Shown: positions 6,420-45,164 of the stretch, piece after piece | How the letters are laid out: each line of letters begins with the position of its first letter | How positions within the stretch are numbered: position 1 is the first letter of the stretch | Assembly: GCF_021869535.1 (NCBI RefSeq) | Contig: NW_026262723.1 | Location: 105,772,001 to 105,836,000, forward strand | Direction of reading: 5' to 3' | Origin: Mytilus californianus | Lineage: Eukaryota | DNA length: 64,000 nucleotides | Position numbers and translations under genes: made by a program | Notes under the pieces: model-generated | Seen by the model: only the letters and a program-made list of their open reading frames with translations | The model's database searches: none | Told to the model about the DNA's origin: nothing

Positions 6420-6645
6420 TCAAAGCTTTTCTACCCGCCCAGGCTAGGAATAGATTACCGTAGCTATATTTGGCAAAACCTTTTAGGAATTTTTGGTCTC
6501 AATTTCTATTCAACTTCGTACTTTGTTTGGCCTTTTTAACCTTTTTTGATTCGAACGTCACTGATGGGTCTTTTTTAGACGAATCATGCGTCTGTCGCGC
6601 ACAATTTCAATCCTAGGATCTATGATGATTTTATTTCTCACCATA
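6420..6645 (+). mobile_element. Fragment of a high-copy repeat bearing a hammerhead motif (Penelope/retrozyme-associated type)
   Basis: Contains the degenerate hammerhead at 6553-6600. It resembles a common mussel interspersed repeat (from memory, not searched). Confidence 0.5.
6553..6600 (+). ncRNA. Degenerate minimal type I hammerhead ribozyme
   Basis: acgtca-CTGATGG-gtc-tttttta-gac-GAAT-catgcg-TC-tgtcgc follows the layout stem I, CUGAUGA core, stem II (GTC/GAC), GAAA, short stem III, UH site. Both core boxes carry a substitution. Confidence 0.5.
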
Positions 6646-6739
6646 CCTTTTTGTTTTCGGTCATGGTATATCAGCTATGCCTTTATACATACATAAAATT
6701 ATATGAATTTTCTTTAATGGTTATCAAATTATGTAAAAA

Positions 6740-7930
6740 AAATCCGGACTGGATTTTTTTACTTTTTATATGTCTCTAATGCCATGGTTCTCATCCTTTT
6801 GATGTTAAGTGCTGGTAGTTTAGACTGTTCAAGTTGGGTGTTGTAAGAGCTATTGTAGTCTTCGTAAATAAATCTGAGTGATCGTTCTTGTATTTTTTCG
6901 ATTTTTTTTTTATAGTGTTTCAAGTTGTTTACTGCAAAAGTGCCATGTTATTGGACAATAGCTGAGGTTTGAAAGGATGAAAGAGTGGTAAATAGTAAGT
7001 TTAGAAACTAGTAGTCTGGTTTGATTAACTCCAATTCTTTTTAATACGTTTAGTTGTGCTGCTTTTTACAAATGTTTGAGATGTGTGTATTGAAGTCTAG
7101 TTTAAAGTCTATGGTTACACCAAGAGTATTTACCTCGTCATCATATTGAATACTGATGCCGTTTAAGTTGATGACTGTATTTTGTGAATGTGTTTTTCGC
7201 CTATTTCGATTGTCTGGAATTTTTCTGGGTTTGCCTGCATTTTGTTGAATGAGTAACATGATATTTGGGAGTTACTATATTCCTCTAAGTGTTTAATAAC
7301 TGGTTCCAGAGAAGTGCCAGATTTAGAGAGGGTGTTATCATCGGCATGGTTATATAATTCACAGTGTTTTACAAAAAGGAAGATGTCATTAATAAAGACA
7401 TTAAATAATACAGAGCCAAATATAGATTCCTGAGGAACACCTTTATAAACATCAAGCATTTGACTTATACTTTGTCCTATTTTTACACATTGTTTCCTTA
7501 ATTTTTGTGAGATAACTTTTTAATAAATCTAGTGCAGATGTACCTAGGCCTTATTTTCTTAGTTTAAGAAGAAGATCATGTGGTAGACAGTCAAATACTG
7601 CTTTGCTTAGATCCATAAGTATTGCTGCGATATATTCATCATTATCTAGTGCCTTTTTCTCCAGTCTTCTAAAAGTTGACTGACAGCCATAGCTTGATAA
7701 AATAAAAGCCGCAGGGAAATGGTTAGAAATATCATCAAAGTATTTAGAAAGTTGATTTTCTATGGCTGTTTCTATTGATATAGTAGGTAGAACACTAACA
7801 GGTCTATAATTCCCTTTTTTCAAGAACACTATTTTTTTGTGGATAAGCGCTACTTGAGCAATTTTCAATGAGTCTGGATAATGAAGTGGATAATGACAAA
7901 TTTACAAGTTCAGTGATAGGTTTAACCACA
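6740..7930 (-). mobile_element. Decayed non-LTR retrotransposon (CR1/L2-type) reverse transcriptase
   Basis: Broken ORFs with RT motifs: KGNYRPVSVLPTIS, AILMDLSKA-FDCLPH, GVPQESIFGSVLFNVFIND, NHADDNTL, LGVTIDFKLDFNTHISNICKK, EKIQERSLRFIYEDY. Multiple stops and frameshifts. Confidence 0.85.
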
Positions 7931-7974
7931 ACAGGTTTAGCATAGTGCAGTAGTTTTGACTATATATATATATA

Positions 7975-8293
7975 CACTGTAAAAGTCGTGCTTAGAAATT
8001 AAACACTTGTATTACATGTTTAGATCTAAACGTGTTTAGGATTGTGTTTAATTTCTAAACACATTTCTCAGTAAGCACATAATATCTAAACATGTCTTGA
8101 ATTTAAACACTTTTAATGTGTTTAAAAATGAAAGTGTTTAGAAATTAAACACTTTTTTCTAAGCTAAACATGATTCGAAACACAATCCTAAACACATTGT
8201 ACTGAGACACGTTTAGATCTAAACATGTAAAAAAAAGTGCACAACAGATGTGCTTAGAAATGTGTTTAGGATCTAACCACCATTTTTACAGTG
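7975..8293. mobile_element. MITE with CACTGTAAAA terminal inverted repeats (CMC/EnSpm-like), inserted in a TA run
   Basis: cactgtaaaa at 7975 and ttttacagtg ending at 8293; TA on both sides; internal aaacac/gtgttt subrepeats in both orientations. Confidence 0.75.
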
Positions 8294-8759
8294 TATATAC
8301 CATCTGTATACCAGACGCCGTTTTTTACATATATTTTACTTATACGCTTAGATACAAAAGTTTCATTTACAGGCTGAAAAATAAGTTAATTGGATGTTGA
8401 CCTTGAGTATTTGTTTGTAATGACTTCTATACTTGAATGTTTATCGTTAATAGGTATGCTGTTGTCACCAATATTTTTGACTACATTGCCTATTTGATAT
8501 TTCTGTTTCGACACGGTCAACGCTCCGACCCATTCTTTCTCCTGCATAATTTATTAACTTTTCCTACATACAAAGATATAAGATTCCCGTTTTAATCATC
8601 GTGAACGTATTGCAAGTATGCGAGATGTCTTATTTTCTTTGCCTGCTTAGTTGCTAGTTTTTCATTGGCTGTATATATGATTACATTTGAGCATCTGTCA
8701 ACCATTCCCGTTTTAGTTATCTGATATTTCTATATTCTTACATAATTCGAAGAATAGCC

Positions 8760-9115
8760 AATGATAAATCAAAGGATAACAGGAATCACGCCAAATATTA
8801 AACTGGGAAATGGATAAGGTTTCCAAAACATGATCATACATTCTGCTTAAACGTGTGCTTAGAGGGGCGATCTTGAACTTACAGCGAGGACCTAGCTTAT
8901 AATCTGACTTAGAGAGATTATTGTGACTTCGAGATGACGGTAACAAACAGTATAGTTTAACAAATTGTTTATATATGTACATGTTATATAAGTCATATAA
9001 TAATGTTTCGTGAATGTTTTGTCTAAAATTAATGTATATATGTTTGTCTTTTTATTATTTTCTTGTTTGTAATTACGGGCCTTTGGATTAGGAAATAAAC
9101 TGATTTGATTTGATT
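8760..9115 (+). mobile_element. Possible 3' end relic of an L2/Crack-like LINE
   Basis: Weak GKWIRFPKHD..C...C similarity to the C-terminal zinc-knuckle region, followed by aataaa and a (gattt)n tail. Confidence 0.3.
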
Positions 9116-9449
9116 TTAGTTTAATATTATTTAAGGTGACTTATAGGTTCATTTGGGCCGGGTTTATTCGTATTTCTTTCTCGTATATTATATCTTTGTA
9201 ATTTGTACATATTTACAGATATGGAGCAAAATCCATACCGTTTAGTCTGCTATAAAAGGCGCCGACATGACGAAATGTGAAAGAATTCCTAATTCAACTT
9301 ACAGCTCTTTTCATAATGCTAGCAAGACAACGGTTTGTTTGGCTTGCTTGCTTTGTTTGTATCAATGTTTGCTCAAGCATTGTAATTAAGATTGACATCT
9401 GAAAACAACATAAAAAGGCGGATTTAAACTTGTATACATATATTTTATG

Positions 9450-10030
9450 ATGGTATAATACTAAACCCCTAACAGGAGGGATTGTGCCTGGTATTCATAT
9501 GATGAAGACATAATCTTTCAATCAGTTTAATTGAGGTCTGGAGCTGGCATGTCAGTAACTGCTAGTAGTCTGTTGTTATTTATGTATTATTGTCATTTTG
9601 TTTATTTTCTTTTGTTTCCTATTCTGACATCGGACTCGGACTTCTCTTAAACTGAGTTTTACTGTGCGTACTGTTGTACGTTTGTTTTTTCTACATTGGC
9701 TAGAGGTATAGGGGGAGGGTTGAGATATTAAAAAACATGTTTAACCCCGCCGCATTTTTGCGCCTGTCCCAAGTCAGGAGCCTCTGGCCTTTGTTAGTCT
9801 TGTATCATTTTTAATTTTAGTTTCTTGTGTATAATTTGGAGTTTAGTATGACGTCCATTATCACTGAACTAGTATACATATTTGTTTAGGGGCCAGCTGA
9901 AGGACGCCTCCGGGTGCGGGAGTTTCTCGCTGCATTGAAGACCCATTGGTGGCCTTCGGCTGTTGTCTGCTCTATGGTCGGGTTGTTGTCTCTTTGACAC
10001 ATTCCCCCGATGATTTTTATTCTCAATTTT
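9450..10030 (+). mobile_element. Penelope-like element 3' non-coding region (same family as 45165-45905 and 47360-48255, opposite orientation)
   Basis: Near-identical reverse complement of the 47360-47940 block, which abuts a Penelope-type ORF end. Confidence 0.7.
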
Positions 10031-11404
10031 ATTATATTTAAATTTGATTGGGCATTATCAAATAATCAAATTTATCTATACACAGGTTTAACTCCACCTA
10101 CTTATATTGTTTGTAGATATCAATCTTAATTACAATGTTTGAGCAAACATTTATATACAAACAAAGCAAGCAAGTCAAACAAACCTTTGTCTTGCTAGCA
10201 ATATGAAAAGAGCTGTAATAATGACGAGAAACAAGAACAATGTTACAGGTCAAAAGTAAAATAATAAAAATACCGAACTCGAAGGAAAATTCAAAACGGA
10301 AAGTCCTTTATCAATTGGCAAAATCAAAAGTTCAAACACATCAAACGAATGGAAAACAACTGTCATATTCCGGACTTGGTAAGGCTTTTATTCCTTATGT
10401 AGAAAATGGTGGATTAAAACTGGTTTTATAGCTAGCCAAACTTTTTACTTGTACGACAGTCGCATAGAACTAATCAACTGTATACAGACTGTCAGTGTTT
10501 CGTGAACATGTTTACTTTTTCGTGAGTTTAAATATGTTAAAAAAATATTGCATGTTTTGGTACTTGGCCGGCAAGCAAATGCTTCAAGATCTCTCCACGT
10601 TAGAAGAATTTCGAAGTATCGTATCATGTGGATTGATATCGAGGCCTTATTACAGTGTAATATGTACACTGTGGTCGCTCTTCAACTTTATGTTATATAG
10701 TTTTAGTTGTATAAAAAAAATTTGATAAATATTTAGTTGTATAAAACAGTTTTGTCTTTGCACTATCTGCTGGACTAAGGTGTGCAGATTGATATTTTAC
10801 TCTAAGCGAACATGGTTGTATGACTTATTAATTAAAATTGGTATTTCAACTAGCTTTTGGTAGCTGTTCCTACACTTAGATCTCAACTTTGTGTATTAAT
10901 TTGTGTGTGTGTGTTTTTTTTTTTGTTTTTTTTTTTTGCACTTAGTACCGACCTCATGAGTCAATCCCTTGGCCTATGTACGTTACAACTGAACTGGGAT
11001 GCAAAAACGTCAATCAAGCCATGCACCTGTAATCCAGTGGTTGTCGTTGGTTGTTGTCTGTCATATTTTTTTGTTTTTTTAATTGTTGAAGTAAAAACAA
11101 TACATTGATTTTTCCCTTTCGAATTACATTTTTACATTTTGTCAGATTAGCGCCTTAAATTTCGCTTACGTATACGATATGGATTCTTTTCTCATTGTTA
11201 AAAGCCGCACAGGGACCTTTTATTGTTCACATCTTGTTTTTCTTTTCCTTTGTTTTTTTTTATTGAAAGTAGGTTTATTTCCAATCTGGCATTTACAAAA
11301 TCTGAGCATACGAATTCTCGCAAGTAATAAAAAAAACTTCGGGAGCTCACGAGGGACGCACCTGTTTTAAAGTTTTAGAGAACACAATTTGATAACTTCA
11401 TTTA

Positions 11405-11673
11405 CAGCCGATTGCATTGAGTGTGTAGGTAAAGGTAATATCTTTGGTTAGCTTGCTTGCTAGCTAAACCGTGAAGTCATTATTAGGTAAGGTAAACTAT
11501 CCTCCTTTAAGAGTAGACTAGTGCGACAGATAACCAATCTATCTGTCTGTAGGACTAGGCTACTTCGAAAGGAGGGTATTATACCTTACCTAATAATGAC
11601 TTCACGGTTCAGCTAGCAAGCAAGCTAACCAAAGATATATTAGCTTTACCTACACACTCAATGCAATCGGCTG
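11405..11673. mobile_element. Palindromic MITE (TA target duplication, CAG termini; Tc1/mariner-like)
   Basis: ta|cagccgattgcattgagtgtgtagg...cctacacactcaatgcaatcggctg|ta; arms of about 120 nt are almost perfectly complementary. Confidence 0.75.
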
Positions 11674-13765
11674 TAACATAATTTTTTAACTTATGGTCAA
11701 GGCACAGTAAAATGCGCTATGTCATGAATGTTTGTAAAAGTTTGCATACAACTTTGACACGCATACGTTAAAGGGGAGGGTCGTTGAACCATAACTTAAT
11801 ATCGAAAATAATAATGCATTCATCTCTTTTATTTTCTTAAACATTACAGAATGAAATCTTTCAAAATAGGTGAACAATTGTATAGAAAGCACATAAGAAA
11901 TGGCCGGGAAAATGAACGTATATGGAAAGTACATAAAAAACGGCAGAAAACTTGGCACTCTTAAATATGTCTTAAAATCATCAAATACTAATCCACAAAT
12001 TTATCTTAAAACATTAAATTGATATGATGTTGATTCATAAATTTCCGTTTTAATGATGTGAAATAATACATAAGTAACTTTTGTTTGATAAATTTCCATA
12101 ATCAAACTCAATTTTGGTCAGAGCACGGGTTTTAAGGGATTTAATTTTTATTTATAGAAAGAGAAGGTAACTCCGAAATTGGGTCCGAGGTCCGTGCATG
12201 GTTGCCAAATTTGCTGTCGAGTGTAGCATAAATCAGCATAGAAATATTATATAACAGAAAGGTTAACATTTGTATAAAAATAATATTGACTATCCCTTAT
12301 CGCATGATGAGACTCATGAAAACCACGTGCATTATGTAGAGCGCATAAGGAAGTTATCATGACATAAGCACTGATCAGCTTAGCCTTAGAATTTACCAGA
12401 TAGTATACAATTAACGTTTAAATACATTCAAATCAGATAAATATCTGATAATCCAAATAGTGATTACAGACGAGGCTTGCAGGGAAATACCGCAACCAAC
12501 GACCGGTAAATACCAAATACCCCCCCCCCCCTTTTTTTCACCACCACCACACACACAATTAACAGTAAACACACTTGTATTTCTTGTAGGATAAAGCTAA
12601 ATGTTCTTGTAGGATAAAGCTAAATGGAGGAAACTATTTATACCTTTGCTCCTTTTTATTGATTCAGCTAATAAAAGTAAATGATATTTGTATGTTTTAT
12701 TAAGAGGGTGGTAAAGGGTTATTTTCGTGCAACATGTTTTGCCATTTTTATTTCACGTGCAGCCGCGAAAAAGTTTTGTTATTCTTTAACTCTTCAACCT
12801 TGATCAATGATCCATAGATGGAAACTTCCTACTATAAGGCATCTGCATACAAGGTATGAAGTATCCAGGTCATTTAGCTTCTGAAATTAAAGCTTTATAC
12901 AAATAGTTTATGCCGCTGCTGCCGGATGGTTATCCCTATGTCTCGCATTTTGCGACTTTTGTCGCAGGCAAGACTAAAAAAAAGAATACATGAATGTTGG
13001 GTTGAATAATTATTAGAATTATAAGATAACCATTCAGATGTAAATCATGCTAACCGAAATGATTCTGCATACTTAATACCACAGGCACTTGTCTCTAAGT
13101 TCTATGTTTTGGGGAAATACTTTTTATAATTAATCATTCACTGTAAGATTAACACTTCCATTTGGCTGTGAGAAGACGAAATAATTTACAGTTGTCCTAT
13201 TTCAAAGGCCTGTTACAAATGATTCCGAGAATAGAAATAGGGGTGTTATACACCATTTTGTAGATAATTCAATGTAGATTTACGACATAACAAGTTTCAG
13301 TGGGAGAGACAACCGCAGAATTGAAATATAATTTTAGATCGCGACCTGATGACATTTCTCATATATACGAATTAGGTACCTTGTATTATATTAAAGTATA
13401 TAGGTAATTTTTTTCAGAGACAAGTGCCTGTGCTTAATACTTCTCAATAAATATTCTTACGCCATGAACATTATCATGATTATATTATAATTAGATTGTG
13501 GAGATGCATTAGCCTTTTATATACTACATGTATTTGATTATGCAGCTTCAGTATGCCGATTTTGTTTAAAATTTATGTACTATTTGTTTTTAGTTGAAAC
13601 AAGTTAAGGCGACATACATGTATGTGTACCTAAAGTCAGAATATGATTAGTTATATATACCTGTATAGTTTATTTATACAAGATTCAACCATTAACATCT
13701 ATTAAACTTCTCCAATTATCCACTTCTAAGAAGGTTGTTTTACCTTATACTTATTTGTTGTAGTG

Positions 13766-14427
13766 ATGGTTGATCCTGTTACATGGAATTGTAAACAAGT
13801 TGGTCACTGGTTGAAAGAAAATGGTTTTGAAAAATACAAGAAGTTACTCTGTGACGAGCACAAGATCAATGGCGAAGCATTACTAGTACTCACAGAAAAT
13901 GACTTGAAACAGCCACCATTACAGTTGACGGTGTTAGGAGATATTAAACGGTTAATGCTTATCATTAGAAAAGTACAATCACAGAGTAATGTTAATCTAA
14001 GCCCTCAACCAAATGGCTCTAGAACATTCCAGAAAACATCAACACCTCTCTCAAGGTCATACCAACAGTCATCATCTCCACAAAGTTATGAACGTTTGGA
14101 TAGCAATGAGTCGATGGAAGAAAATGATAATGCTGATTTAAATGAAATTTCACAACAGTTGAGACAGGGACATTTTTCCAAAAATTTGGACCCAGAGCTA
14201 TGGAAGACTGCATTAAGTTTCATATATGTATTTACAGTTTTCTTACTGACTTCCTTTGTCATGGTTATAGTCCATGACAGGGTACCAGATACAGATAAAT
14301 ACCCTCCATTACCAGATATATTCTTAGATAATGTACCATATATCCCATGGGCATTTAAAGCATGTGAAATTATTGCAATAGGACTAGGAACAACATGGAT
14401 TGTTTTATTAATATTTCATAATCACAG
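13766..14427 (+). CDS. SAMD8: SAMD8 copy 1 coding exon 1 (SAM domain, linker, TM1-2)
   Basis: Acceptor tgttgtag ends at 13763; ATG at 13766; donor cacag|gtttgt, phase 2. Confidence 0.95.
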
Positions 14428-17400
14428 GTTTGTAAAAATTATGATAGATTTTGGTCAAGTCAAAACTATATTTCTTCCATAAATATAAGTTTATGTAATC
14501 TATTGGACTTTCCTAAACAAATGGTATTCAAACACAAACAAAATTGCATCAATTAAAGAAAAAGACTCACCAGTAGCGCTCAAATTAAAACAGTCATGAC
14601 AGTTCCTAAACCAAATCAAATATTATGAAGTTGAATTGAGAACGGACTAAGTTATCTTTTTACAGATGGTCTGAGGTGTCCTCGTAGAGGGTACTAGGGT
14701 TTAGATATCTAGAGCTTTTCATACATTTTGTACAGCCTTCAACAATGAGAAATTCCCCTATCCGTGTGACAGTCTTCAAAATTGTCTACAGTGTAGACAC
14801 ATTGTGATAAATTCATCAAAGATAACCAATTATTTAAAATACACACTTAATTTTCAATGGAAAAACAAGAAGAGACCAACGAACTGTGAAAAATTTCTTG
14901 ACCTGGGACAGGTTCATAAGCATGTACTGGGGTTAGACAAGTTGTGTGAATGTGCAACCTCGGCCTTTTATCTCCGTCAATAGAATAAGAAAAAGGTACA
15001 AAAATAATGGCCATTAAAAATAACCTCAGTAAAACAGCTACATGTACAAGTGAATTATAACTCAATAATAATGTATCAAAGAATTTACCTGAAGATAACT
15101 CAAAGTAAGTTCAAAAACTTACCTTTTCCCACTCAAAATTAATAAATACTATCAATGAATCAGTACATTTGTTTGTTTTTTTAAAGTTTATGTAATAAGA
15201 AGATTGTTGTTTTACAGATTTATATTGATGAGAAGAATGTTTTCCATGATAGGAACCATTTTTTTACTACGTTGTATTTGTATGTTAATTACATCATTGT
15301 CTGTACCTGGTGCTCATCTGAAATGTGAAGGCAAGGTATGTTATGGCAATAGAGATATAAACAGGTCAACCTAGAAATAAATATGATAACGTGAAGGCAA
15401 TATATGTTATGGCAATAGAGATATAAACAGGTCAACCTAGGAATAAATATGAAAATGTGAAGGCAGTATACATGTATGTTATGGCAATAGAGATATAAAC
15501 AGGTCAACCTAGTAATAAATGTGAAAATGTGAAGACAATATATGTTATGACAATGGAGATATAAACAAGTCAACCTATGAATAAATGTGGCAATAGAGAT
15601 ATAAACAGGTCAACCTATGAATAAATGTGAAAACGTGAAGGCAATATATGTTATGGCAATAGAGATATAAACAGGTCAACCTATGAATAAATGTGAAAAT
15701 GTGAAGGCAATGAATATATATATCATCCTATGAATAACAAAACATTACATAGAAAAATAGACTGAGCTACTAGAACCTCATCGAATACATGTACCTTGGA
15801 TGAACTCAGGTGCTCCGGAAGGGTAAGCACTTCCTGACCTACATGTTTTATATTCATTCTTGTTTTTGATTCTTCTTCTGGTATAAAGTTACAGCTTCAT
15901 AACACTGAAGATTACCTACTGTTTGTATGCATGGGGAATGTTGATTAAAAAAAATATCCGAGAAAAATGCAAAACAATCATCATTATAATTTTAATGATG
16001 ATGGATGGCTGCTTAACGTCCAGCAGCAAATTAATATGCATATTCAGGACGAGTTCACAAGGTAACAGTCTGCAGGAAGACATGTCGCCTTACCCAGACA
16101 CATTATTCTGACTCCGAGCCAACCAGTCTTTGCTCTTACTCCTTAATGCCACGTACAAATCTGAGATGCAGCAAATACCAATTTTAAAGTCTTTAGTTTG
16201 ACTTGGCCTAGGTTCGATACCACGACCCCTTCACTCGAGGTGAACACACTACCACGAGACCACTGAGCCAGGGGCGACCTTCAAATTTTGAGACTTTACT
16301 TGTGGTGTGGCTACATACATGATCAAGAAATTTAGTGATTTGTGTTAGCTGAATGAAGATATCATACTGGTTATGAGTGAAATGATTTCTATTCATTTTA
16401 GCTGTATGGAGATAATATACTGGTTATGAGTGTAATGATTTCTGTTCTATTTCATTTTAGCTGTATAAAGATATCATACTGGTTATTAGTGAAATGATTT
16501 CTATTCTATTTCATTTTAGCTGTATGGAGATAATATACTGGTTATGAGTGTAATGATTTCTGTTCTTTTTCATTTTAGCTGTATGGAGATTGAGTGTAAT
16601 AATTTATATTCTGTTTCATTTTAGCTGTATGGAGATATATGGACCAAACTTCGTAGAACCTTTGAGATCTGGACAGGACTAGGTATGACACTGTCTGGTG
16701 TTAGGACTTGTGGAGATTACATGTTCAGTGGACATACAGTTTTTGTAACTATGCTTAATTTTCTCATAACTGAATGTAAGTTATCATTATATTTTTGGTT
16801 AATTGGTGTATTTACAGATTGAGTTTGTGTTTTGTTATGGATGAACTCTCTTTTCACAGAATTATTGAGTATTTTAGTCATTTTGCAGACAGAGGCATAC
16901 AAGTCCTCTTGACTCTTCTAGTTTATATTAATTTTGCCACAAGGCTGTCTTATTTATGTATCCTTTGGCTTTTACTGTACAAATTTAAAATGCTACTGAA
17001 TTTTCTGTGTCGGTTATAAATCATTTGAAATATTGAGAATACTTATTTTAGACATTTACAAAAAGTTGTTGTTTGCAGTTTATCTATACATTCATATATC
17101 AAGGAATGACAATAGATCCTTTATTATAAGAGTTTTGTGTTTTTCAGACACTCCAAGAAAGATGTACTATCTCCATACTTCAGCATGGGTAGCCAATATG
17201 TTTGCATTATTCTTCATTCTAGCAGCCCATGAGCATTACTCCATAGATGTGTTCGTTGCTTTCTACATCACGTCCCGTATGTTTCTATATTACCACACTC
17301 TTGCCAATAATCGTTCACTTATGTTACGTGATAAGAAGAGAACACGAATCTGGTTTCCTTTATTCTCATTCTTCGAGTCTAAATGTGATGGTATTGTACC

Positions 17401-17506
17401 TAATGAATTTGAATGGCCGCTGCCTAGCTGGACACGAGTTAAACACTTTTTTATTGGATTGAAATCTGACATTGCAGCTAGTTCTAAGAACAAAAAGAAG
17501 CTGTGA
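13766..17506 (+). CDS. SAMD8: SAM-domain sphingomyelin synthase-related protein (ceramide phosphoethanolamine synthase SMSr), copy 1; exons 13766-14427, 15217-15335, 16625-16775, 17148-17506
   Basis: N-terminal SAM domain ([15 protein letters not shown]...[10 protein letters not shown]), PPLPD motif, RR..R..TS motif, [40 protein letters not shown]. All introns are GT-AG. The protein is 429 aa if one extra T at 15239-15243 is removed. Confidence 0.95.
15217..15335 (+). CDS. SAMD8: SAMD8 copy 1 coding exon 2 (119 nt as written; 118 expected)
   Basis: [40 protein letters not shown] reads through only with a T deleted from the T5 run; flanked by ttacag and gtatgt. Confidence 0.9.
15322..15712 (+). 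repeat. Minisatellite of about 66 bp, 6-7 copies, starting at the exon 2 donor of SAMD8 copy 1
   Basis: Unit gtgaaggcaa-tatgttatggcaatagagatataaacaggtcaacct-aataaat-tgaaaat. Confidence 0.9.
15990..16272 (-). mobile_element. tRNA-derived SINE (bivalve type), internally deleted
   Basis: The minus strand begins ggctcagtggtctcgtggtagtgtgttcacctcgagtgaaggggtcgtggtatcgaacc (A- and B-box-like), followed by the body ...gcattaaggagtaagagcaaagactggttggctcgg... Confidence 0.7.
16340..16636 (+). repeat. 59-bp minisatellite repeating the exon 3 acceptor of SAMD8 copy 1
   Basis: ttcattttag|ctgtat occurs with the AG ending at 16401, 16460, 16519, 16578 and 16624 (the true site). Confidence 0.9.
16625..16775 (+). 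CDS. SAMD8: SAMD8 copy 1 coding exon 3
   Basis: 151 nt, [50 protein letters not shown](Y). Confidence 0.95.
17148..17506 (+). CDS. SAMD8: SAMD8 copy 1 last coding exon
   Basis: [53 protein letters not shown]...KNKKKL*. Confidence 0.95.
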
Positions 17507-30419: not shown

Positions 30420-33293
30420 AATACATAATAGCTGTCACTTCCAAACATGATTTGTTTTAAGATTTCAAGTTCGAAATGGACGTTGAAGATATTTGCGTGT
30501 GGATTTGATAAAGCCCTAACGGTTTTGCGTAGAATTCATGTTTCCCATGCTAAGAATTCGACCAGCTAATTTAAAGTTTTTACATTGAGGTGCCATAAAC
30601 ACAAGCAGTTCTCGATGGTAGAACTTTGTATTGAACAGATACGTCATCTTTCTTTTTGTTTGTACCTTTTAGAAATTGACATATTGCATAAAAATACCAT
30701 TTATTAATACTTTTTCATTTTTTTTTTTAAAGATTTCCTTATATAGTGATAGTGACTATGTTTCATAAAAGTACAATTCTTAGTCACAGACATAACTATA
30801 AGGTACAATTATTACATGCATGTGTGAACGGCAAAACAATGACTTAGAGGACTGACTTTCACATTCTTCTTCTTCCTTGTACATTTATAACTTTGAATGT
30901 TTTTTTCAATAATTAAAATTTGTTGCGTTAAATATAGTTGATCAGATTTATAGATAAAAGGGATGGACCCACAGTACTGTGGTAAAAAGGTCCTTCTTTC
31001 TAAATCAAGGCATTTACAAATCATAATGTAGTGGTACTCGTCATCAATGTCGCTTGAGTCACAGAGACGGTGGACTCTGTCTTCGCTCTGTTAACCCTGC
31101 CACCTCAAAGACTCAGTTGGCAGATTGTGAGTGACTATCACATTTATATTTTATGATTCAAAATCTTGTATTTTTTGTTTCTTGAATAAGAAATGTCAAA
31201 TTTAATGAGATTAAGTATGTATTGTCTTGAACCTGATTAAAAAACCTTATAAAACAGGACATGACATGAAATCCAATTAAAAACTCAACCTAATTACAGT
31301 CAATTGTAATCTGTGAATAACAGTAGTGTCCTGGTATTTAATTCTTTTGCAAGTAAGTTGATAGTAGTTTTACTCTATGATATTAGAAAGTTCAAACGTA
31401 AGTTTACTGAATTTCATTATTGTTTTATTTCGATTAGAAAATACAAATATATCAGAAATGTATTTTTATTTAATTTCATCAAGATAAAAATAAATATAAA
31501 TAAACTTGAATTTGCGATAATTTTGTATTTAATATACTTAATTGCCTTCCTGATTTACGCTATTAGATTTTTTTATATATCAAAAAATAAAAAAAATAAT
31601 ATTAAAAAAAAATTTAAATTACAAGGACTTTCTTGTATTTGTTGACTAACCTTTGAAAAATATATACACTGTATTATGAAGTGCGTTGTCATTGTAATTC
31701 GAGTCGCGTCAGTGACAAGTTACAGTCCGTTTTAGTCGGAATTAATAAACACATGTTGACACCGGTTTTTAATCCGATCATTTCAAGTAAAATGGACATG
31801 AAATATCCCAACAGCATTTTCCACTTTTAAATCATTTAATGGACGTTTTATTTTCTGTTCAGGAATTATTTTTCTGTAAATTGCATTAATCGTCATTTGA
31901 AATGCAGATTTTAATGAATGAAATTTAAATGTTTGTGATCGATGTTTGTGGTTATTCTATTTTTATGTACCTCGACATTATCTGGGAAAGTTTGAATTAA
32001 AACGTGACGTAAACTTGAATACATTATATCAACCCATATTCTAACCTTCTTTAATTATGGTCAATAGAAAACAAATATTGTGTAGCCATAACAGTCAAGC
32101 ACAATGTAAAATAAGTCATTACTTGATCACACGCTTGACGAGAACTTCTGAATTCGGTAATATATATTATATTCTTTTTGCTCTCCGTCTTCTCCTTTTT
32201 ATGTCAAATACAACTGTAATAAATATTTGATAAATAATGAACGCTTGATACGTTGAACGAGTTAGGATTCTCTTTTTGAATGTTCAACTGTTATGAAAAT
32301 ATTGTCATACAAAATTTTTATAACGGAAAAAAAAACGATAACTTCTTAAATCAGTAATTATTTTTTTAGATTGATCCATCACTTAAAAATCCAATAGTAA
32401 GAAACGATTTCAGCGTTTCCTTTATTAGCGATAGCGATTTCTCCTTGCGATTATTTGTTTTGTTGCTATAGTATTGCACCTTATACTGTTACACGTAGGT
32501 CACATTTCAGAACGGACTTTTAAATAATAATGACTAATTATCATTAAACTTAGGTTTAATAGTGAGAACGTTGATATAATCGACCAGAAGTGTAAATGTG
32601 CAAACAGGTAATGTAATCGCTATATTATTATCATTCTTTTATTAAAAGGCAGTATTTTCTTTTTCTTTTTTTTTTCAACTTTAATACAAGTGGTAAGGGT
32701 AAGATTTGGTGTCGCATATTTGTATTATAGTTCAAAATTGGAAACAATATACCGGTATAAATCTTTTCGTTCCAGATAAAAACCCTGGAGGAAATTTGTC
32801 CCAAATTCGGCAGAAATTTTTTTGACTGAATAGTTTAGAAAAAAAGTTTTTAATATAACTCACGGGAGTGTAATACAACTTGAGGAATACAACGAACATG
32901 ACCAGTATAATAACGGGTTACATTATACCGGTCAACGGTTGATCGTTTTCGAAAGACGCAGATTTTATTAAATATATATTTATCATATATTCATCGCTAA
33001 GCGGTTCTAGTTCAAATGTTGTTTTCAAAATTGGAAAGGCAGAATTCAAATATTTGTAAAGAATAATAACATTGGTGATAATCATTTCTCGTGTGAATGA
33101 CAAATTAATGACATCAATTGTATGATATATGTTATCAAATTATGATTTGATATACAGATTCTGTTTTGACATGAAATTTTCATTAATGTAAATTTATTTG
33201 ATTCAAATTCTTGATACGAGCATGTCATGGGTATAATAAAAATCTTATCATTGTATTTATTTTGTCATTTGATTTCAGATTTCGTAAGAAAAA

Positions 33294-33880
33294 ATGTCGG
33301 ATCCTTTATTATGGAACTGTGATAGAGTGAAACAATTTTTATGTGAGAACGGGTTTCAAGAATACCAGAAACTACTATGTGATGAGAACAGAATCGACGG
33401 TCGTGTTCTTCTAACATTGACAGAAAAGGATTTATTTCAACTTCAAATATCAGCATTAGGCGATGTCAAAAGACTATTGTTTGCAATCCAAGACCTTCAG
33501 ATCAGACAGAATTCACGGTTACAAGATCAAAATTATCATAATGACTGTCAATCCTCATCTTCTTCAGAAAGTTCCTACATGATAGATATTCTAGATTCCT
33601 CTGACGACGAAAAACATAACTATAGACCAAAACGGAAAATTAACCAAGAAATATGGAAGACGGGTGTCAGCATTGTCTATACATTTTTTGTACATTTTGT
33701 GACTAGTTTTGCCATCATAGTTGCACAAGAGCGCATGCCTGACAAAAAGAAATATCGCCCATTACCTGACGTTATGTTAGATAGCATATCTTATGTACCG
33801 TGGGCATATAAAGTGACAGAGGGGGTTATTTTAGCTGGATTTATTACGTATTTTATAATATTAGTGTTTCACAAATATAG
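33294..33880 (+). CDS. SMSr-like copy 2 coding exon 1
   Basis: Acceptor gatttcag ends at 33278; ATG at 33294; donor tatag|gtacgt, phase 2. Confidence 0.92.
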
Positions 33881-36800
33881 GTACGTATATATTCAGATGA
33901 ACAAAGCAAGAAAAACACAGTACTTTGTGAGAGGTTTAGCGCTTTAAAACCAGGTTTAATCCACCATTTTCTACATAAGAAAATGCCTGTACCAAGTCAG
34001 GAATATGACAGTTGTTGTCCATTCGTTTGATGTGTTTGTGCTTTTGATTTTGCCATTTGATTAGGGACTTTCCGTTTTTAATTTTCCTCGGAGTTCAGAA
34101 ATTTTGTGATTTAACTTTTTGCAGAGAATATCTTTTCATTTTTAAGCAGAAAATTAAAGAACATATATAGAAAGACAGTTTATGCTCCGTTCGGATTTAT
34201 ATCACCAACAAGGAAACCAAAGTATAAAATAAAATTAAGAAGATATGGTATGATTACCAGTGAGACAACTCTCAACCAGAGACCAAATGGCGTAGAAGGT
34301 TGGCAACTAGATGTCATCGTACGGCGTCCAACAAGATATATAAGCCTTTGAAAATTTGGCAGGAATCGATTCTCTCTAGATTTTCATAAAATTAACATCA
34401 GCCCCTTTTTTCTTTCAAAAACTATGAAAAAAATAACAAGGATTTTATAAGATTTTCAAATATGGCTTTTTAAACTATATGTTATAAAATATGAAAAGAA
34501 AAGTAAGGGTTTGTGGGCAAACATTTTAATGGCACTACATGGATAAAACCAGTAGATTCCAAAAATCTGGCAAAAATTCAAAAACAAGAGGAGCGAACAT
34601 CCTTAAAGGCCCCGAAATATCAAACATAAAACAATTCAAATATAAAAAAGAAGATGTGGTATGATTGCCAATGAGACAACTCTCAACAAGAGACCAAAAT
34701 TAATGACACAGAAATTAACAACTAGAGGGTACCGTGCGTCCTTCAACAATGAGCAAAGCCGCATAGTCAGCTATAAAAGGCCCCGAAATGACAAATGTAA
34801 AACAATTCAAACGAGAAAACCAACGGCCTAATTTGTGTACAAAATAATAAACGAAAAACAAACAAGTAACACAGCAACAAACGACAACCACTGAATTACA
34901 GGCTCCTAACTTGGGACAGGCACATACAGAATGTGGTGGGGTTAAATATGTTAGCAGGCGCACAACCCTCCCCTAACCTGGGACAGTGGTGTAACAGTAC
35001 AACATAAGAACAAACTATAGAAATCAGTTGAAAAAGGCTTAACTCATCTGATGGATACAAATAGAAATACATCTTACAAAAACACGGAGTGGACGTGGCA
35101 GGGTACTTATACATCCCAACAACAAAAAGACACTTAAGTACAGATCTGAGAGTACTCGCAGTTACTGACAGCTAGTTCAAAGCCAATAACAACTAATAAA
35201 AAAAATCATGCATCTAAGACTAAATGCTCATTTCGTGTAGCTGTACATAAACCGTCCCTCGAATAGTAATTATGGTAAAGGTAATGGATTTCATTTAAGT
35301 CTCTTTAAGCAAGTACGAAGAAGACGAAACAATACCATTTAAAATAAGTATCAAAGCTGTTTTTTTGTTATGTGTTAACCTGCTTTCTCTCTAGATATTT
35401 AAAAGTCACGTTATTGAAATGTTCAGGTCTATATTAAAGTAAAAGTTAATTTTTGTATTAGGATTTGACACGCGATCTTCAAACATGCATTGTCAGAAGA
35501 AAGTCAGACTGATCTCCAAAACCTAATAATAGGAGTACTAACCCTAAGCTGCTAGGTAATCCTTGCATGCTTGGAGATTTAATGTAATCCATAATACTTA
35601 GGGTATGTAGTCATAATATATAATTTGATAATAACTTATAAAACAATTTGTATATTTTCAGGTTTATAATACTCAGAAGAATGTTTGTCATTGCCGCCTC
35701 CATATTTTTATTTCGCAGTATATGTGTTGTCGTCACCTCATTACCTATGCCTCAAGAACATTTTAACTGTGAAAAACTGGTATGTTGTCACAATTTTTAA
35801 ACGAATGTTATATCCAATATATATAAAGTCAACTATGTCCATACATAATTAATTTTAGTCACAGAGAATATGCACCGCATTGTCGATTGATTATAGTTAG
35901 AGGCCGAACGCCCAGTATTACAGATAAGTACTCGAAACGAGGCCAAATTAAATTATGAAACACTCAAAAAGCTTTTGACAAGATTTCGAATGGTATAAAG
36001 AATGGGTATTTTTACAATAAGATTTGTGGTATTCTCTTTGCATTGTTATAGACAAACAAATGGAAACAAACATTCAGAATCCACCGCTGTATAGCGTCAA
36101 CTTAGCCTCTCACAATCTTTTTCTCATATATATATATATATGTATACAGCTTTGAATTTAGATTGAACGTGTCTACTCCGACGAATTACAATCATAATAC
36201 TTTGCTTGTAAAAAATCTTTGTGTTAAGTTTGATCTAATTCAACATTATTGATACGCATGATCAACAAATGAAATTAAATGAAAAAATGAAGCAGACATA
36301 ATGTAGAATTTAAATAAACACGATTCAAAAGATGTAATAAGTTTTAAAAAAATCTTTAATAACTGCACATGTAATGTTAAATTATATTTTTAGGTATTTA
36401 AAAACGGCTGGGAAAGATTTTCCAGAGCACTAGAGATTTATTCCGGAATGGGAATGAAAGTCTCCGGATTAAAAACTTGTGGAGATTACATGTTCAGTGG
36501 ACATACAGTCACCATAACAACTCTCATTCTTCTCATAAATGAATGTAAGTAAATTTTATTTATGTCCCGTTACATCACATTTTCTTCGTAATATCATATG
36601 GAACTCAATAAATTATGATTTACATTAAAAAAAAAGTCCAACGACACGAAAAGAGAAAGAAAAAGAAATAAACACTTATATTATCAGCCATACTGGAGAC
36701 ATCTTCAGTATCTAAATGACCAGTTGTAAACAGATTCAAAATATAGAGTCCCCTTTGTAGATTATTCTAACTGTCGGGTATCCCGTGTAATTGAAAATGA

Positions 36801-37378
36801 TCACAGCTTTTTGCTACAGCTATAGTTTTACTTTTTAAAGATTTAACTATTCCTTTTGATTCACATAAAAAGTCAGAAGTAGAGCCAATTTCCCCGGAAT
36901 TTATTTTTCAACAAGACCATATTCAAAAAGTCTTTCAATATTTACTTAAATTTGTAGTATCACAGCCCAATGTGTGTACGTTGACAACGTCATAATTTTA
37001 TTTTTTTTAATTTCAGATACACCAAAAAGATGGATATTACTACACACACTGGTGTGGATTGTGGGGTTGTTTGGTATTTTCTTCATTTTAGCAGGACACG
37101 GACACTATACCTTAGATGTGATAGTAGCATTTTATATTACATCACGGTTATTTCAATATCACCACATCCTAGCAAACAATAAGACTTTAATGACAAGAGA
37201 TCAGAGTAGACTTAAGAAATGGTTCCCAGTCTTTCATTTTTTCGAATCAAATTGTGATGGAATAGTTCCAAATGAATACGAGTGGCCATTAACTATTGTG
37301 GAATCAGCAATGCAACGGTGTGCAAAACTCAGGAACTATATATCTTCATTGCTTTCAAGAGATAAACAGCTGATCTAG
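33294..37378 (+). CDS. Divergent SAM-domain sphingomyelin synthase family paralogue (SMSr-like copy 2), 405 aa; exons 33294-33880, 35662-35779, 36394-36544, 37017-37378
   Basis: SAM domain ([15 protein letters not shown]...[10 protein letters not shown]), [55 protein letters not shown]. The frame is intact (1218 nt), and intron positions and phases are identical to copy 1. Confidence 0.93.
34640..35225 (+). repeat. High-copy interspersed repeat family A (gattgccaatgagacaact...), in intron 1 of copy 2
   Basis: Related copies lie at about 1860-2200 (inverted), 34250-34330, 43250-44200, 47140-47350 plus 48270-49050, and 57830-57945. Confidence 0.8.
35662..35779 (+). CDS. SMSr-like copy 2 coding exon 2
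   Basis: 118 nt, [40 protein letters not shown]; flanked by ttttcag and gtatgt. Confidence 0.92.
36394..36544 (+). CDS. SMSr-like copy 2 coding exon 3
   Basis: 151 nt, [50 protein letters not shown](Y). Confidence 0.93.
37017..37378 (+). CDS. SMSr-like copy 2 last coding exon
   Basis: [54 protein letters not shown]...RDKQLI*. Confidence 0.93.
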
Positions 37379-40300
37379 TATTTTCTAACAACGAGATGAC
37401 ATCGTTATATTTTGATCGCTTTGAATTCTCAATTACATTTTGAAAATACATTGACTCCAGCACAAAACCAATGCATCTAAATCGTTTCTGTCTATCAATC
37501 GATTCTAGTATTTAGTATATTGTTGTTCTGATAGTATCATTTGCGAAGCACTTGTGTTTGATTTGAAATTAAGTGGTGAAGGCAAAAGTCGATATTAGGG
37601 CCATTGTTTTAAAGAATGTGACAAGTGTTTTGTGTGTTTTCGTTTGTTGCTTAGTTATACAAATCTGATAACATTGATGAAGTCAGAAACAGGAACTGAA
37701 ATAGTAAAACGAAATATGAAAGCACATTGAGCCAACGGTAGTATTTTGGATTTTGGATTTTAATTGACATTATATTTTTACACAGAACAGTATTTGTACT
37801 GTAATAACGCTAATATGAGAATCGGATTCATGTTTTTTTTGTCATATTGAACATCCTCCATAACTTTATTTTTAAAGTTTTTATTTATTATTTATTTATG
37901 ATTTTAACGTTGTTATACAATTTTATGGCATTATTACATGAATAAATTTTATTTTATTTTTTATGTCGTTTTTCGATTTCTATTATGATATGATTTGTTG
38001 AAATTATTTTTATAACGATAATTTCTCTTGTTTGTTAGAGTGTAATGTTCTTTTCATATTGGAAAAGGAAACATAAAAGTAGAATGTAAGACGGGTTTAT
38101 CTGTAATTGACCTAGAAAACATGGGCGCATCTATTAACATCTCACGTGACCAATCCGCCATTACAACCGTGAAAAATAACGCACGTGTATTGATCAAAAC
38201 ATTATCGATTTTCTGTTTACATTTGGATTTCTTTCATTTTCTGATTTATTTTACTATGGATGCTGCCGAAAATTATAAAAAAAACATGGAAGCATTTCTT
38301 GTGCAGTCAATAGTTGTACAAATAATCGTAAAAAAAATTCAGGAGTGGAAAAAATCAATATGCGAATTACACAACGAGTTGCCGCACAATGACTGCCCTC
38401 GTTTGATTCCATATACGTCTTATGTGATGCCTTCAGACGAGTCAACAAACCTGAGTAGACCAAAGCCGTATAAACATAAAAGAAAACTCTGCATAAACAG
38501 GTTTTTGTATGATCCAGACATTTTTTTTGGATGATGCGCCACTGCACGACAATCCGTTTTTTTTTTTAATAAAACTTGTTATGAAAGTAAAATAACTCTG
38601 ACCGACGAATGTTTACACGTTGTAAAACGACTGTTAAAAACTTAAATTAATCTATAAAATTTAATCCGATGACTACAGTGCATCTGCCTCTTTTTGTATA
38701 GAAAATCCACCGCTACATCAGATGCGGATCCAGGATTTTAAAAAAAAGGGGGGAGGGCGCGTGCCCCCAAACTTTTGTAGTGGAAGCGGTAAAATGTCTG
38801 GATTAACCATAAATGAAGCTAATAACAATGAAACCTACCCCGAGGCTACATGTAGTTATAATTGCAAGCAAATCAACCCAGTGTGAAGAGACGAACTTTT
38901 TTCATTCATGACTTCTATAGTATCTTTATGCTGCAAAATAGACAGACATTCCGACAATATTAACTCAGACAAAAATATTGTTAACAGAGGAGTAAGGAGT
39001 TCAAAATTAAATAAAAGGGAGGGGGAACCTCGTCAGACGTTTAAGAAATATTATGAATGACAGTGACGCCTTATTGTATATTTATGTAACTAAGTTTTCT
39101 TTACTTTAGTGGAATTACTACACAATTTAATTTTCAACTACGATATTGCAGATCAGCTGTTGCTCGATCGTACTGATGAGGTTAATACTTAGTTTGATAT
39201 TTGGTAATTTTGGACGGCGCTTTAATATTTCGAAAAGTAAGGCTTGTAAAATATTTTATTCCTGGGTGCAGTTCTTGCTGAAAAACTTAAAGGTTTTATA
39301 TATATATATGTAGGTCTGTGTGCTTATGGTATATTTTCACTTTATTTTCTTTATAAGACGTATACAGTTACTTCTGTTGAATTGAACTTTCCTCAGTAGA
39401 ATATTCTGTGCATGAATTCTAAAATTTTATACATTAGAAAGGATTTTTCAAAGGTCTAACTCAAATAGTTTACTAGAACCTACGAAAGCGTAGCTATACC
39501 GGTAATCCGACAACCTTAAATTCCTACACTTCAGTAGTCCGACGGTCCGAAATACACCCCTAATGTTATATTGTAATACTGTATTTCACTGTATTATATA
39601 CATCGGGGACTTATATAAGAGTTTAATGCGGATTAGGGATGAAAATCTACGAGACCTCTGTTTTGGAGTGGTTGGGAGGGGAGTTGGCAAAACACTAAAT
39701 GACACTTCTAAAACATAACTAATCATCGCTTTGAATTTACATGTTGGAGTCTTTGGTGGTTTAATGGCATTCATTTATATTAAGCATGGATCATGATGTT
39801 ATATACTATACATACTATAGTAGTTGTATGTCGAGTAATTTTCTGCAAAAGAAATTGGAATCGAACACATAATAACTTAAACTATAGGAATACATGGGCC
39901 GTGAAAGTTCAAAACTTCTTAAGCCCATATTCTAATCGCAAAGTTATATCTACATATGGCCCGACGCATCGATAGCATATAGCGGAATTCATGCGGACAC
40001 CAAAGTAATACGAAAATGTCACCGTGCTCAGTTTTGAGCATTATACGTGAGTCAAGCAAAAAGCACAAAACTCTCGTCTCTGTAGGACCGTCTGATTAGT
40101 GGATTGTTAAATTTTAGGACTGTCTCATTATAGGTCTGACCACAGAAATTTCTATGATTTGATAAAATTGCACCCTGGTTTTTCTGATTTATACTGCACT
40201 CGTTCTATTTGAGCAGTCAAAATGCGTTGACCGTATATTTCTATGTCATATACAGTCACTGACCTGATATCACTTTTCCTCATGAATATTTAAATAGAAA

Positions 40301-44460: not shown

Positions 44461-45164
44461 ACAGTTATTACCGTTTATATTTGTCTTTTACAATCTCCTT
44501 AGAATCAGATCTCAGTCCATTTTGCTCCGTCAGATTTGTTTAATCTAACGGAGCAAAGATCAAAATCTAAATTTGATGAGATTGCCTTATGCCTTCTTAT
44601 CCTGTTCAATCGTTTAGTGTCAGTCCAAAAACCACGTCCTTCACCAAGGTCAACTCTATTTTGAGAGCAGCTGATTTATTTCTTTGTATTGCAACGATTT
44701 TTTCCTAAATGTCCGACATATGAATGCCAACAGGGACAACAGGGATGCGGTTGCGTTAATTATTGGTTAAAGCTTTTTATTTCAGAAAGTAAAGAAAAAA
44801 TTGATAAAAATATTGGTTCAATGACATTATATGTTTTATCACAATATTTTTCAATAATGATTGTGAGTAAAAGGACAAATATATTTGGTATAACGAATCA
44901 TTGCAAGGTATACATGTTCGTCAAACAAGATTCATTTGTCTTTTACCATAATTATGTTCAGAGCAGGGTACCGGGATCCAGGATTTTTGAAAGGGGGGGG
45001 GGGGGGGGGGGGTTAGTCGATGAATGTATGAATGTTCAAACTGAATATATACCGCTGAGCGAAGCGAGGCGAACACATTTTTGGACGATTGTATGCTTAA
45101 AAAATCTTTTAAATCGTGAGAAACATGAGATTTTGTTTTATTCGGTATAACAGACATAAATATT

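What the first reader, a model, noticed from the sequence alone, without database searches (positions are those of the whole stretch)
33294..37378. Intact tandem SMSr paralogue with Gly at the head-group-selectivity position: candidate new ceramide head-group transferase
Seen: copy 2 keeps the catalytic His (SGHT), His and Asp (HYTLD), but the residue before the second His is Gly (GGA at 37100-37102, HGHY). Copy 1 has Glu there (GAG at 17231-17233, HEHY). The neighbouring residue also changes (AAH to AGH). The frame is intact and intron phases match copy 1, indicating an old duplicate under selection. Established: in mammalian SMS1/SMS2/SMSr this residue switches specificity (Asp gives sphingomyelin only, Glu permits CPE). 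In Trypanosoma brucei SLS enzymes the residue before the catalytic His is the main selectivity determinant, and small side chains go with inositol-phosphoceramide synthesis. Bivalves are rich in ceramide aminoethylphosphonate (CAEP), whose synthase I do not know to be identified. Inference: copy 2 makes a different phospho- or phosphono-sphingolipid (IPC, CAEP or its N-methyl form), a lineage-specific branch of sphingolipid synthesis.
Basis: partly seen in the sequence, partly recalled or inferred. Interest (0 to 1): 0.82.

Follow-up and report, generated by a model that had tools for sequence, protein, structure and literature searches.

The report
Mussel SMSr paralogue with Gly selector
A mussel carries, next to its ordinary SMSr lipid-enzyme gene, an intact, expressed second copy from a mussel-and-oyster-only subfamily whose head-group-selecting glutamate is replaced by glycine, so it probably acts on a different lipid, though nothing here ties it to the phosphonolipid CAEP.

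Summary
Copy 2 (33294-37378, +) is an intact four-exon gene of 405 aa: SAM domain plus six-helix SMS core. It has SGHT, HGHYTLD, GGA at 37100-37102, and the same intron phases and the same sizes of exons 2 and 3 as copy 1 (HEHY).

It is a working gene:
- A public spliced contig matches all my exon junctions.
- dN/dS against M. trossulus is 0.12, the same as copy 1 (0.13).
- The five catalytic residues described for human SMSr are all kept.
- A confident model overlays human SMSr (TM 0.89).

It belongs to a clade seen only in Mytilus (four paralogues) and oysters (one). Gly is invariant there, alongside other fixed changes in the lumenal loops (H to Q145, S to P224, L to F/Y230). So a changed head-group pocket is well supported.

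The specific reading (CAEP or IPC synthase) is not supported:
- CAEP-rich scallops, clams, snails, octopus and corals showed only HEHY SMSr.
- The lost Glu would also be expected to serve an aminoethyl head group.
- Gly at this site is not new: 112 of 119 arthropod SAM-less SMS-like proteins have it.

The product is unknown. This is a new variant of a known kind, already annotated as "SMSr-like", and of moderate interest.

The parts
33294..33880 (+). Copy 2 exon 1: ATG, SAM domain (aa 1-76), disordered linker, TM1, lumenal loop 1 with PLPD (aa 156-159), start of TM2
   Evidence: Translation. Pfam SAM_1 E 1.7e-12. Matches human SMSr 8ijr residues 12-224. Spliced contig L001 covers it.
35662..35779 (+). 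Copy 2 exon 2 (118 nt): TM3 with the RR motif and the start of lumenal loop 2 ([11 protein letters not shown])
   Evidence: AG/GT borders. Same length as copy 1 exon 2. Junctions confirmed by L001.
36394..36544 (+). Copy 2 exon 3 (151 nt): lumenal loop 2 and the D3 motif [10 protein letters not shown] (D266, H272), TM4
37017..37378 (+). Copy 2 exon 4: TM5, D4 motif HGHYTLD, TM6, C-terminal tail, TAG stop
   Evidence: human SMSr 316-405, E 1e-32. The 3' UTR continues to about 37859 in contig L001.
37100..37102 (+). GGA = Gly314, at the position of human SMSr E343 and SMS2 E271 (head-group selector, directly before catalytic His315)
   Evidence: Invariant Gly in the clade.
33726..33728 (+). CAA = Gln145 at the lumenal end of TM1. 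It replaces a His (human H174) that is invariant in 184 canonical SMSr and 60 SAM-less SMS-like proteins
33819..33821 (+). GAG = Glu176, the equivalent of human E205 (a member of the catalytic pentad), retained
   Evidence: Alignment to 8ijr. Pentad residues as listed in PMC13133130.
35744..35755 (+). Codons P224-M225-P226-Q227: lumenal loop 2 motif changed from SMSr-type SVPG to PMPQ/E
13766..17506 (+). Copy 1: canonical SMSr/SAMD8 (4 exons, 429 aa, HEHY), the tandem parent-type gene 15.8 kb upstream
   Evidence: Groups with scallop and oyster canonical SMSr.

Best explanation
Copy 2 is a functional, transcribed gene of a subfamily derived from SMSr/SAMD8. The subfamily arose by duplication in pteriomorph bivalves. 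It is present as four paralogues in Mytilus and one in oysters.

The protein keeps the N-terminal SAM oligomerisation domain, the six-helix lipid phosphatase/phosphotransferase core and all five catalytic residues. I therefore infer that it still cleaves the phosphodiester of a glycerolipid donor at the lumenal face, releases diacylglycerol, and passes the phospho head group to ceramide or to water.

What has changed is the lumenal head-group chamber. The Glu before the D4 His, which SMS2 needs to make CPE, is Gly. A set of otherwise invariant SMSr residues in lumenal loops 1-3 is also replaced and then fixed.

The most likely consequence is that it no longer works as a CPE synthase like copy 1. 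It either handles another head group or acts mainly as a phospholipase-C-type DAG producer.

Shown here: the gene structure, expression, selective constraint, clade membership and the residue pattern. Inferred: catalytic activity and the shift in specificity. Unknown: the actual substrate and product.
For: - Intact ORF with GT-AG introns.
- Pfam SAM_1 plus PAP2_C.
- Full-length similarity to human SMSr structures 8ijr/8ijq.
- AlphaFold model with pLDDT 88.5; its core overlays 8ijq_A at TM 0.89, rmsd 2.3 A, 48% identity, and its SAM domain resembles the DGK-delta SAM.
- Pentad equivalents E176, D266, H272, H315 and D319 are all present (pentad as described in PMC13133130).
- Spliced 1712-nt Logan contig with exactly my junctions. 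Runs from 12 studies hold an exon-sized share of the stretch, one of them labelled RNA-Seq.
- dN/dS 0.12 overall and 0.10 in the core against M. trossulus, compared with 0.13 for copy 1.
- Clade of mussel and oyster Gly proteins, SH-aLRT 92-99. The tree that holds this clade together with pteriomorph canonical SMSr is 7.9 lnL units better than the free tree, p-AU 0.64.
- 28 positions where the clade departs from SMSr residues conserved at 85% or more. Many are fixed in 9-10 of 10 members and lie in or next to the lumenal loops.
- E271D in SMS2 lowers only CPE synthesis (PMC11663969).
Against: - No enzyme assay exists for any member of the clade.
- The residue-to-function rule comes from mammalian SMS2/SMS1 and from trypanosome SLS, not from a Gly variant.
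- Human SMSr itself is a very weak CPE synthase with PLC and PAP side activities (PMC7988496), so the ancestral 'main' activity is itself unsettled.
- My attempt to lay raw reads failed, so expression level and tissue are unknown.
- The M. coruscus public assembly shows a 1-nt deletion in exon 3 of the orthologue. If real, the gene is dispensable in some haplotypes.
Confidence: 0.6

Rival explanations
1. One reading: copy 2 is the synthase of ceramide aminoethylphosphonate (or its N-methyl form), or of inositol-phosphoceramide. It would take the head group from a phosphono-glycerolipid or from PI.
For: Mytilus membranes are very rich in CAEP (29 mol% in haemocytes, PMC9174665). No 'CAEP synthase' is named anywhere in the held literature. 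The head-group selector and the lumenal loops are changed. In TbSLS a small Ser at this site goes with IPC synthesis (PMC11796370).
Against: The Gly clade was found only in Mytilus and oysters. Scallops, unionid, dreissenid and Solemya clams, eight gastropods, Octopus, Exaiptasia, Nematostella and corals are groups reported to hold CAEP (PMC9174665, PMC8708635 title list). They appear in the same hit lists with HEHY SMSr only. AEP carries the same aminoethyl group as phosphoethanolamine, so a CAEP synthase would be expected to keep the Glu (inference). Canonical copy 1, or a CDP-alcohol-type enzyme using CMP-AEP, are equally open candidates (own knowledge of Drosophila CPES; not tested). Arthropods, which are not reported to hold CAEP (own knowledge), have Gly at this site in their SMS-like enzymes.
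Confidence: 0.12
2. Copy 2 has shifted towards the specificity of SAM-less SMS1/2-type enzymes, meaning a bulkier, choline-like or N-methylated head group. It would have converged on the arthropod SMS-like active site while keeping the SMSr scaffold and SAM domain.
For: At 5 of the 28 clade-specific positions the clade carries exactly the residue that is invariant in 60 arthropod SAM-less SMS-like proteins: I179, P224, Y/F230, L281 and G314. Three of these lie in lumenal loops 2 and 3. 112 of 119 arthropod SMS-like proteins have Gly before the catalytic His, including the planthopper protein. Planthopper SMS homologues are reported to regulate sphingomyelin synthesis (Shi 2019, as cited in PMC7943485; I did not read that paper).
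Against: The Mytilus lipidome papers read here report CAEP and PE-ceramide and treat them as the analogues of sphingomyelin; they do not report a sphingomyelin pool (PMC7034892, PMC9174665). Most clade-specific changes (H to Q145, T to C217 and others) are not shared with SMS-like enzymes. No Gly-type enzyme has been assayed biochemically in anything I could read.
Confidence: 0.15
3. The Gly is functionally tolerated. Copy 2 does the same job as copy 1 (trace CPE synthesis and ER ceramide sensing), and the paralogues are kept through division of expression among tissues or stages.
For: Catalytic pentad and SAM domain are intact. Constraint is equal to copy 1. The isopod Armadillidium has SMSr-type proteins with Gly or Ala at this site, so the position can change in SMSr without gene loss.
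Against: Glu is otherwise kept in SMSr-type proteins from cnidarians to vertebrates (81 of the 88 further proteins from the profile search). Gly has been frozen across the whole clade since before the mussel-oyster split, together with other replacements of invariant residues. Even the mild E to D change lowers CPE synthesis in SMS2.
Confidence: 0.13

Closest known systems
SMSr / SAMD8 (human structures 8IJQ, 8IJR; Drosophila and other canonical SMSr), the ER ceramide phosphoethanolamine synthase
   Same: N-terminal SAM domain, six transmembrane helices, D1-D4 motifs, and the catalytic residues E-H/D-H-D. 48% identity to the human core, with model TM 0.89. Tandem neighbour of a canonical SMSr, with the same intron positions.
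   Different: Gly instead of the Glu before the D4 His. His to Gln at the end of TM1. SVPG..HL changed to PMPQ..HF/Y in lumenal loop 2, plus about 20 further fixed replacements. A long branch in trees.
Arthropod SAM-less SMS1/2-like proteins (annotated phosphatidylcholine:ceramide cholinephosphotransferase 1/2-like)
   Same: Gly before the catalytic His (HGHY or RGHY) in 112 of 119. They also share Pro and Tyr in lumenal loop 2 with the bivalve clade.
   Different: They have no SAM domain and form a separate deep branch. They keep the TM1 His that the bivalve clade lost.
Trypanosoma brucei SLS1-4
   Same: This is a paralogue family in which the residue directly before a catalytic His predicts the product (Ser = IPC, Phe = SM/EPC) (PMC11796370).
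   Different: It is a different, SAM-less branch of the family. The residues involved are Ser and Phe, not Glu and Gly. No sequence comparison was made here.

Membership tests
Sphingomyelin synthase family (PAP2_C / LPT superfamily) | PAP2_C domain with D3 (C-G-D-x3-S-G-H-T) and D4 (H-Y-T-x-D-V) motifs and the His-His-Asp triad | tested here: met
   Pfam PF14360 at E 1e-24. [10 protein letters not shown] at aa 264-273 and HYTLDV at aa 315-320.
Sphingomyelin synthase family (PAP2_C / LPT superfamily) | Six-helix membrane fold that can be superposed on a solved SMS-family structure | tested here: met
   Model pLDDT 88.5. Foldseek against 8ijq_A: E 3.5e-16, TM 0.89, rmsd 2.3 A.
SMSr / SAMD8 subfamily | N-terminal SAM domain fused to the SMS core | tested here: met
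   SAM_1 at aa 7-68. The SAM part of the model matches the DGK-delta SAM at TM 0.91.
SMSr / SAMD8 subfamily | Catalytic pentad E205-H301 / D295-H344-D348 (human numbering) | tested here: met
   E176, H272, D266, H315 and D319, by alignment to 8ijr. Pentad as listed in PMC13133130.
SMSr / SAMD8 subfamily | Glu directly before the D4 His (human E343), required for CPE synthesis in SMS2 | tested here: not met
   Gly314, GGA at 37100-37102.
SMSr / SAMD8 subfamily | Orthology: branches inside the canonical SMSr tree, following species relationships | tested here: inconclusive
   The free tree puts the clade outside all canonical SMSr, on a long branch. A tree that holds it with pteriomorph SMSr is not rejected and scores better.
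SMSr / SAMD8 subfamily | CPE synthase activity and ER residence | not testable with these tools
   Needs expression and assay.
Kinetoplastid-type IPC synthase (TbSLS1 / LmjIPCS) | Signature Ser before the catalytic His, and no SAM domain | tested here: not met
   Gly rather than Ser, and a SAM domain is present.
CDP-alcohol phosphotransferase-type CPE synthase (Drosophila CPES) | CDP-alcohol phosphotransferase domain | tested here: not met
   No such Pfam family among the hits at E up to 0.01.

The most novel reading that the evidence does not exclude
The mussel and oyster Gly-type SMSr paralogues are head-group-switched ceramide phosphotransferases. They would make a sphingolipid other than CPE, with CAEP, N-methyl-CAEP and a choline-type lipid as the candidates. 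That would be a lineage-specific branch of sphingolipid synthesis and could include the unidentified CAEP synthase of these bivalves.
Probability: 0.25. Interest if true: 0.75.

Novelty: new variant of a known kind. Interest (0 to 1): 0.45.

Why it matters
SMS-family enzymes set the balance between ceramide, diacylglycerol and the bulk membrane sphingolipid. How they choose a head group is known from only a few engineered mutants.

This clade is a natural experiment. It is an SMSr scaffold that has held Gly at the selector position, plus a remodelled lumenal chamber, under purifying selection since before mussels and oysters split. It occurs in animals whose main sphingolipid (CAEP) has no known synthase.

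Copy 1 and copy 2 sit side by side and differ at defined residues, so they form a ready-made pair for swap experiments. The practical gain is a short, testable list of candidate enzymes: the four Mytilus Gly paralogues, the oyster one, and canonical SMSr.

The limits matter too. The proteins are already in public databases as "SMSr-like". The phyletic pattern does not track CAEP. The same Gly is ordinary in arthropod SMS-like enzymes.

Tried and rejected
Expression therefore rests on the spliced Logan contig and on word shares.
- A first structure model from the 7-sequence alignment was too poor to use (pLDDT 58.5). It was replaced by a model from 75 sequences.
- Kol 2017 and Vacaru 2013 are not in the held library. 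Their claims are cited only through papers that quote them, or marked as my own knowledge.
- The idea that the Glu is part of the catalytic pentad was checked and dropped. The pentad Glu is E205, not E343.
- A search for further copies inside the window found only copies 1 and 2.
- ORFs at 38121-38534 and 44689-45150 have no Pfam match.
- The spliced 405-aa protein has no reference, so it was given as letters once. After that I worked through exon references and the 99%-identical database protein P0177.
Full report
**Observation**

Reading 33200-37500 and splicing four exons (33294-33880, 35662-35779, 36394-36544, 37017-37378) gives a 1218-nt ORF. All introns have GT-AG borders, and the protein is 405 aa. 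A tblastn of this protein on the window finds one other copy, at 13766-17506. I modelled that copy as four exons and 429 aa.

Both genes have intron phases 2/0/1 and identical lengths for exons 2 and 3 (118 and 151 nt). GGA at 37100-37102 is Gly in [14 protein letters not shown] at 17231-17233 is Glu in [11 protein letters not shown].

**What the protein is**

- Pfam finds SAM_1 (aa 7-68) and PAP2_C (aa 263-335).
- The pieces match human SMSr structures 8ijr/8ijq along the whole length. With native numbering, Gly314 falls on human E343, directly before H344.
- The catalytic pentad proposed for human SMSr is E205-H301 / D295-H344-D348 (PMC13133130). Copy 2 keeps all five as E176, H272, D266, H315 and D319. 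The replaced Glu is the selector residue, not a pentad member.
- An AlphaFold model built on 75 relatives has pLDDT 88.5. Its membrane core overlays 8ijq_A with TM 0.89 and rmsd 2.3 A. Its SAM domain resembles that of DGK-delta, as published for SMSr (PMC5264588 abstract).

**Is it a live gene?**

- P0177 is a database protein 99% identical to copy 2. It is encoded without interruption on a 1712-nt Logan contig (L001).
- That contig aligns to the window in four blocks whose ends are exactly my exon borders. It adds about 480 nt of 3' UTR.
- Twenty runs from 12 studies hold an exon-sized share of the stretch. One is labelled RNA-Seq.
I avoided those places afterwards.
- Exon identities are 98-99% to M. 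coruscus and 92-94% to M. trossulus. The window therefore comes from a Mytilus close to M. coruscus (inference).
- Against the M. trossulus orthologue, dN/dS is 0.12 (0.10 in the core) at dS 0.26. Copy 1 gives 0.13. Copy 2 is as constrained as the canonical gene.
- The order VDAC (minus strand), copy 1, then copy 2 about 18 kb downstream is the same in M. trossulus.

**Relatives**

An exhaustive search with exon 4 returned 150 representatives. Fifteen of them have HGHY. Named members show three separate groups:

- Mytilus and oyster SAM-bearing proteins.
- An isopod SMSr.
- Insect SAM-less SMS-like proteins.

Word and profile searches show the following:

- Mytilus has the canonical gene plus four Gly paralogues: copy 2, and the P0179, P0199 and P0296-P0298 types.
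- Oysters have a canonical gene (P0303, P0304) plus one Gly gene (P0064, P0173).
- Scallops, Solemya, Potamilus, Dreissena, eight gastropods, Octopus, sea anemones and corals appear only with HEHY.

In trees the Gly proteins of mussels and oysters form one clade (SH-aLRT 92, inner node 99). Copy 1 sits with pteriomorph canonical SMSr (97). The free tree places the long-branched Gly clade outside all SMSr. A tree that holds it with pteriomorph SMSr scores 7.9 lnL units better and is not rejected (p-AU 0.64). The simplest history is a duplication in early pteriomorph bivalves, fast divergence, then further duplication in mussels. By my own knowledge of bivalve history, the mussel-oyster split is several hundred million years old.

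**What changed besides the Gly**

I compared 10 clade members with 184 canonical SMSr proteins. At 28 positions SMSr is at least 85% conserved but the clade differs. Changes that are fixed or nearly fixed:

| Copy 2 position | Change from canonical SMSr | Note |
|---|---|---|
| 145 | His to Gln | human H174; also invariant in 60 SAM-less SMS-like proteins |
| 172 | Phe to Tyr | |
| 217 | Thr to Cys | |
| 224 | Ser to Pro | |
| 225 | Val to Met | |
| 227 | Gly to Gln/Glu | |
| 230 | Leu to Phe/Tyr | |
| 251 | Trp to Tyr | |
| 281 | Phe to Leu | |
| 314 | Glu to Gly | the selector position |

By the model's helices, most of these lie at the lumenal ends of TM1-TM3 and TM5 or in lumenal loops 1-3. 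That is the side where the head group is bound. PMC12122681 points to the TM3-TM4 connection for head-group binding.

At five of the 28 positions (179, 224, 230, 281, 314) the clade has the residue that is invariant in arthropod SAM-less SMS-like proteins. This is a modest sign of convergence.

**Background claims**

- Kol 2017 could not be read. PMC11663969 restates that E271 of SMS2 is crucial for CPE synthesis. It also shows that E271D lowers CPE synthesis alone, leaving SM synthase and PLC activities intact.
- PMC11796370 confirms the TbSLS signature residue next to a catalytic His: Ser for IPC, Phe or Tyr for SM/EPC.
- Human SMSr also has PA-phosphatase and PLC activities (PMC7988496).

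**CAEP**

Mytilus is rich in CAEP (29 mol% in haemocytes) and also holds PE-ceramide (PMC9174665, PMC7034892). No paper in the held library uses the phrase "CAEP synthase".

Three things weigh against copy 2 as that enzyme:

- The clade is missing from the other CAEP-rich groups in my lists.
- AEP has the same aminoethyl group as phosphoethanolamine, so the Glu should be kept rather than lost (inference).
- Gly at this site is the normal state in arthropod SMS-like proteins, 112 of 119. These include the planthopper protein, whose family is reported to regulate sphingomyelin synthesis (cited in PMC7943485).

Canonical SMSr, or a CMP-AEP-dependent transferase, remain open candidates. I could not test either.

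**Verdict**

The gene is real, expressed and constrained. It belongs to a previously undescribed but publicly annotated ("SMSr-like") subfamily with a rebuilt head-group chamber. That it handles a different head group, or mainly releases DAG, is the best reading (0.6). CAEP or IPC synthesis specifically is weakly supported (about 0.12).

Noticed in passing
window 15321-15711 and 16345-16636 (copy 1, intron 2): Tandem repeats of 66 nt and 59 nt. The first repeats the last bases of exon 2 with its GT donor. The second repeats the AG acceptor with the first bases of exon 3. Intron 2 of the canonical gene therefore holds several decoy splice sites.
   Followed up: no
L003 about 9950 (M. coruscus GCA_011752425.2, orthologue of copy 2 exon 3; window equivalent about 36443): The public M. 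coruscus assembly lacks one C of a CC pair. This shifts the frame after EIYS and explains why the gene is annotated there as two models (255 aa and the 180-aa 'SAMD8' CAC5409198.1). It could be an assembly error or a real null allele; this is not resolved.
   Followed up: partly
P0176 (M. galloprovincialis gene model): A chimeric read-through model. Residues 1-180 are the C-terminal half of copy 1 (98%), and residues 228-450 are the middle of copy 2 (85%). This shows the tandem order also exists in M. galloprovincialis, and that the annotation there is wrong.
   Followed up: partly
L002 about 12960 (M. trossulus orthologue): The M. trossulus copy 2 ends six codons early at a TGA (399 aa). The C-terminal tail is therefore not constrained.
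   Followed up: no
P0169 and P0103 (Armadillidium vulgare): Isopod SMSr-type proteins carry AHGHY and AHAHY. These are independent losses of the selector Glu outside bivalves.
   Followed up: no
window 270-13000 (minus strand) and L005 1-2757: A VDAC (Porin_3) gene lies head-to-head upstream of copy 1.
   Followed up: partly
window 34225-34290 and 34645-34710 (copy 2, intron 1): Two copies of a roughly 60-nt element (…gatatggtatgattaccagtgagacaactctcaaccagagaccaaa…) lie about 420 nt apart inside intron 1. It is probably a dispersed mussel repeat. Seen by eye.
   Followed up: no
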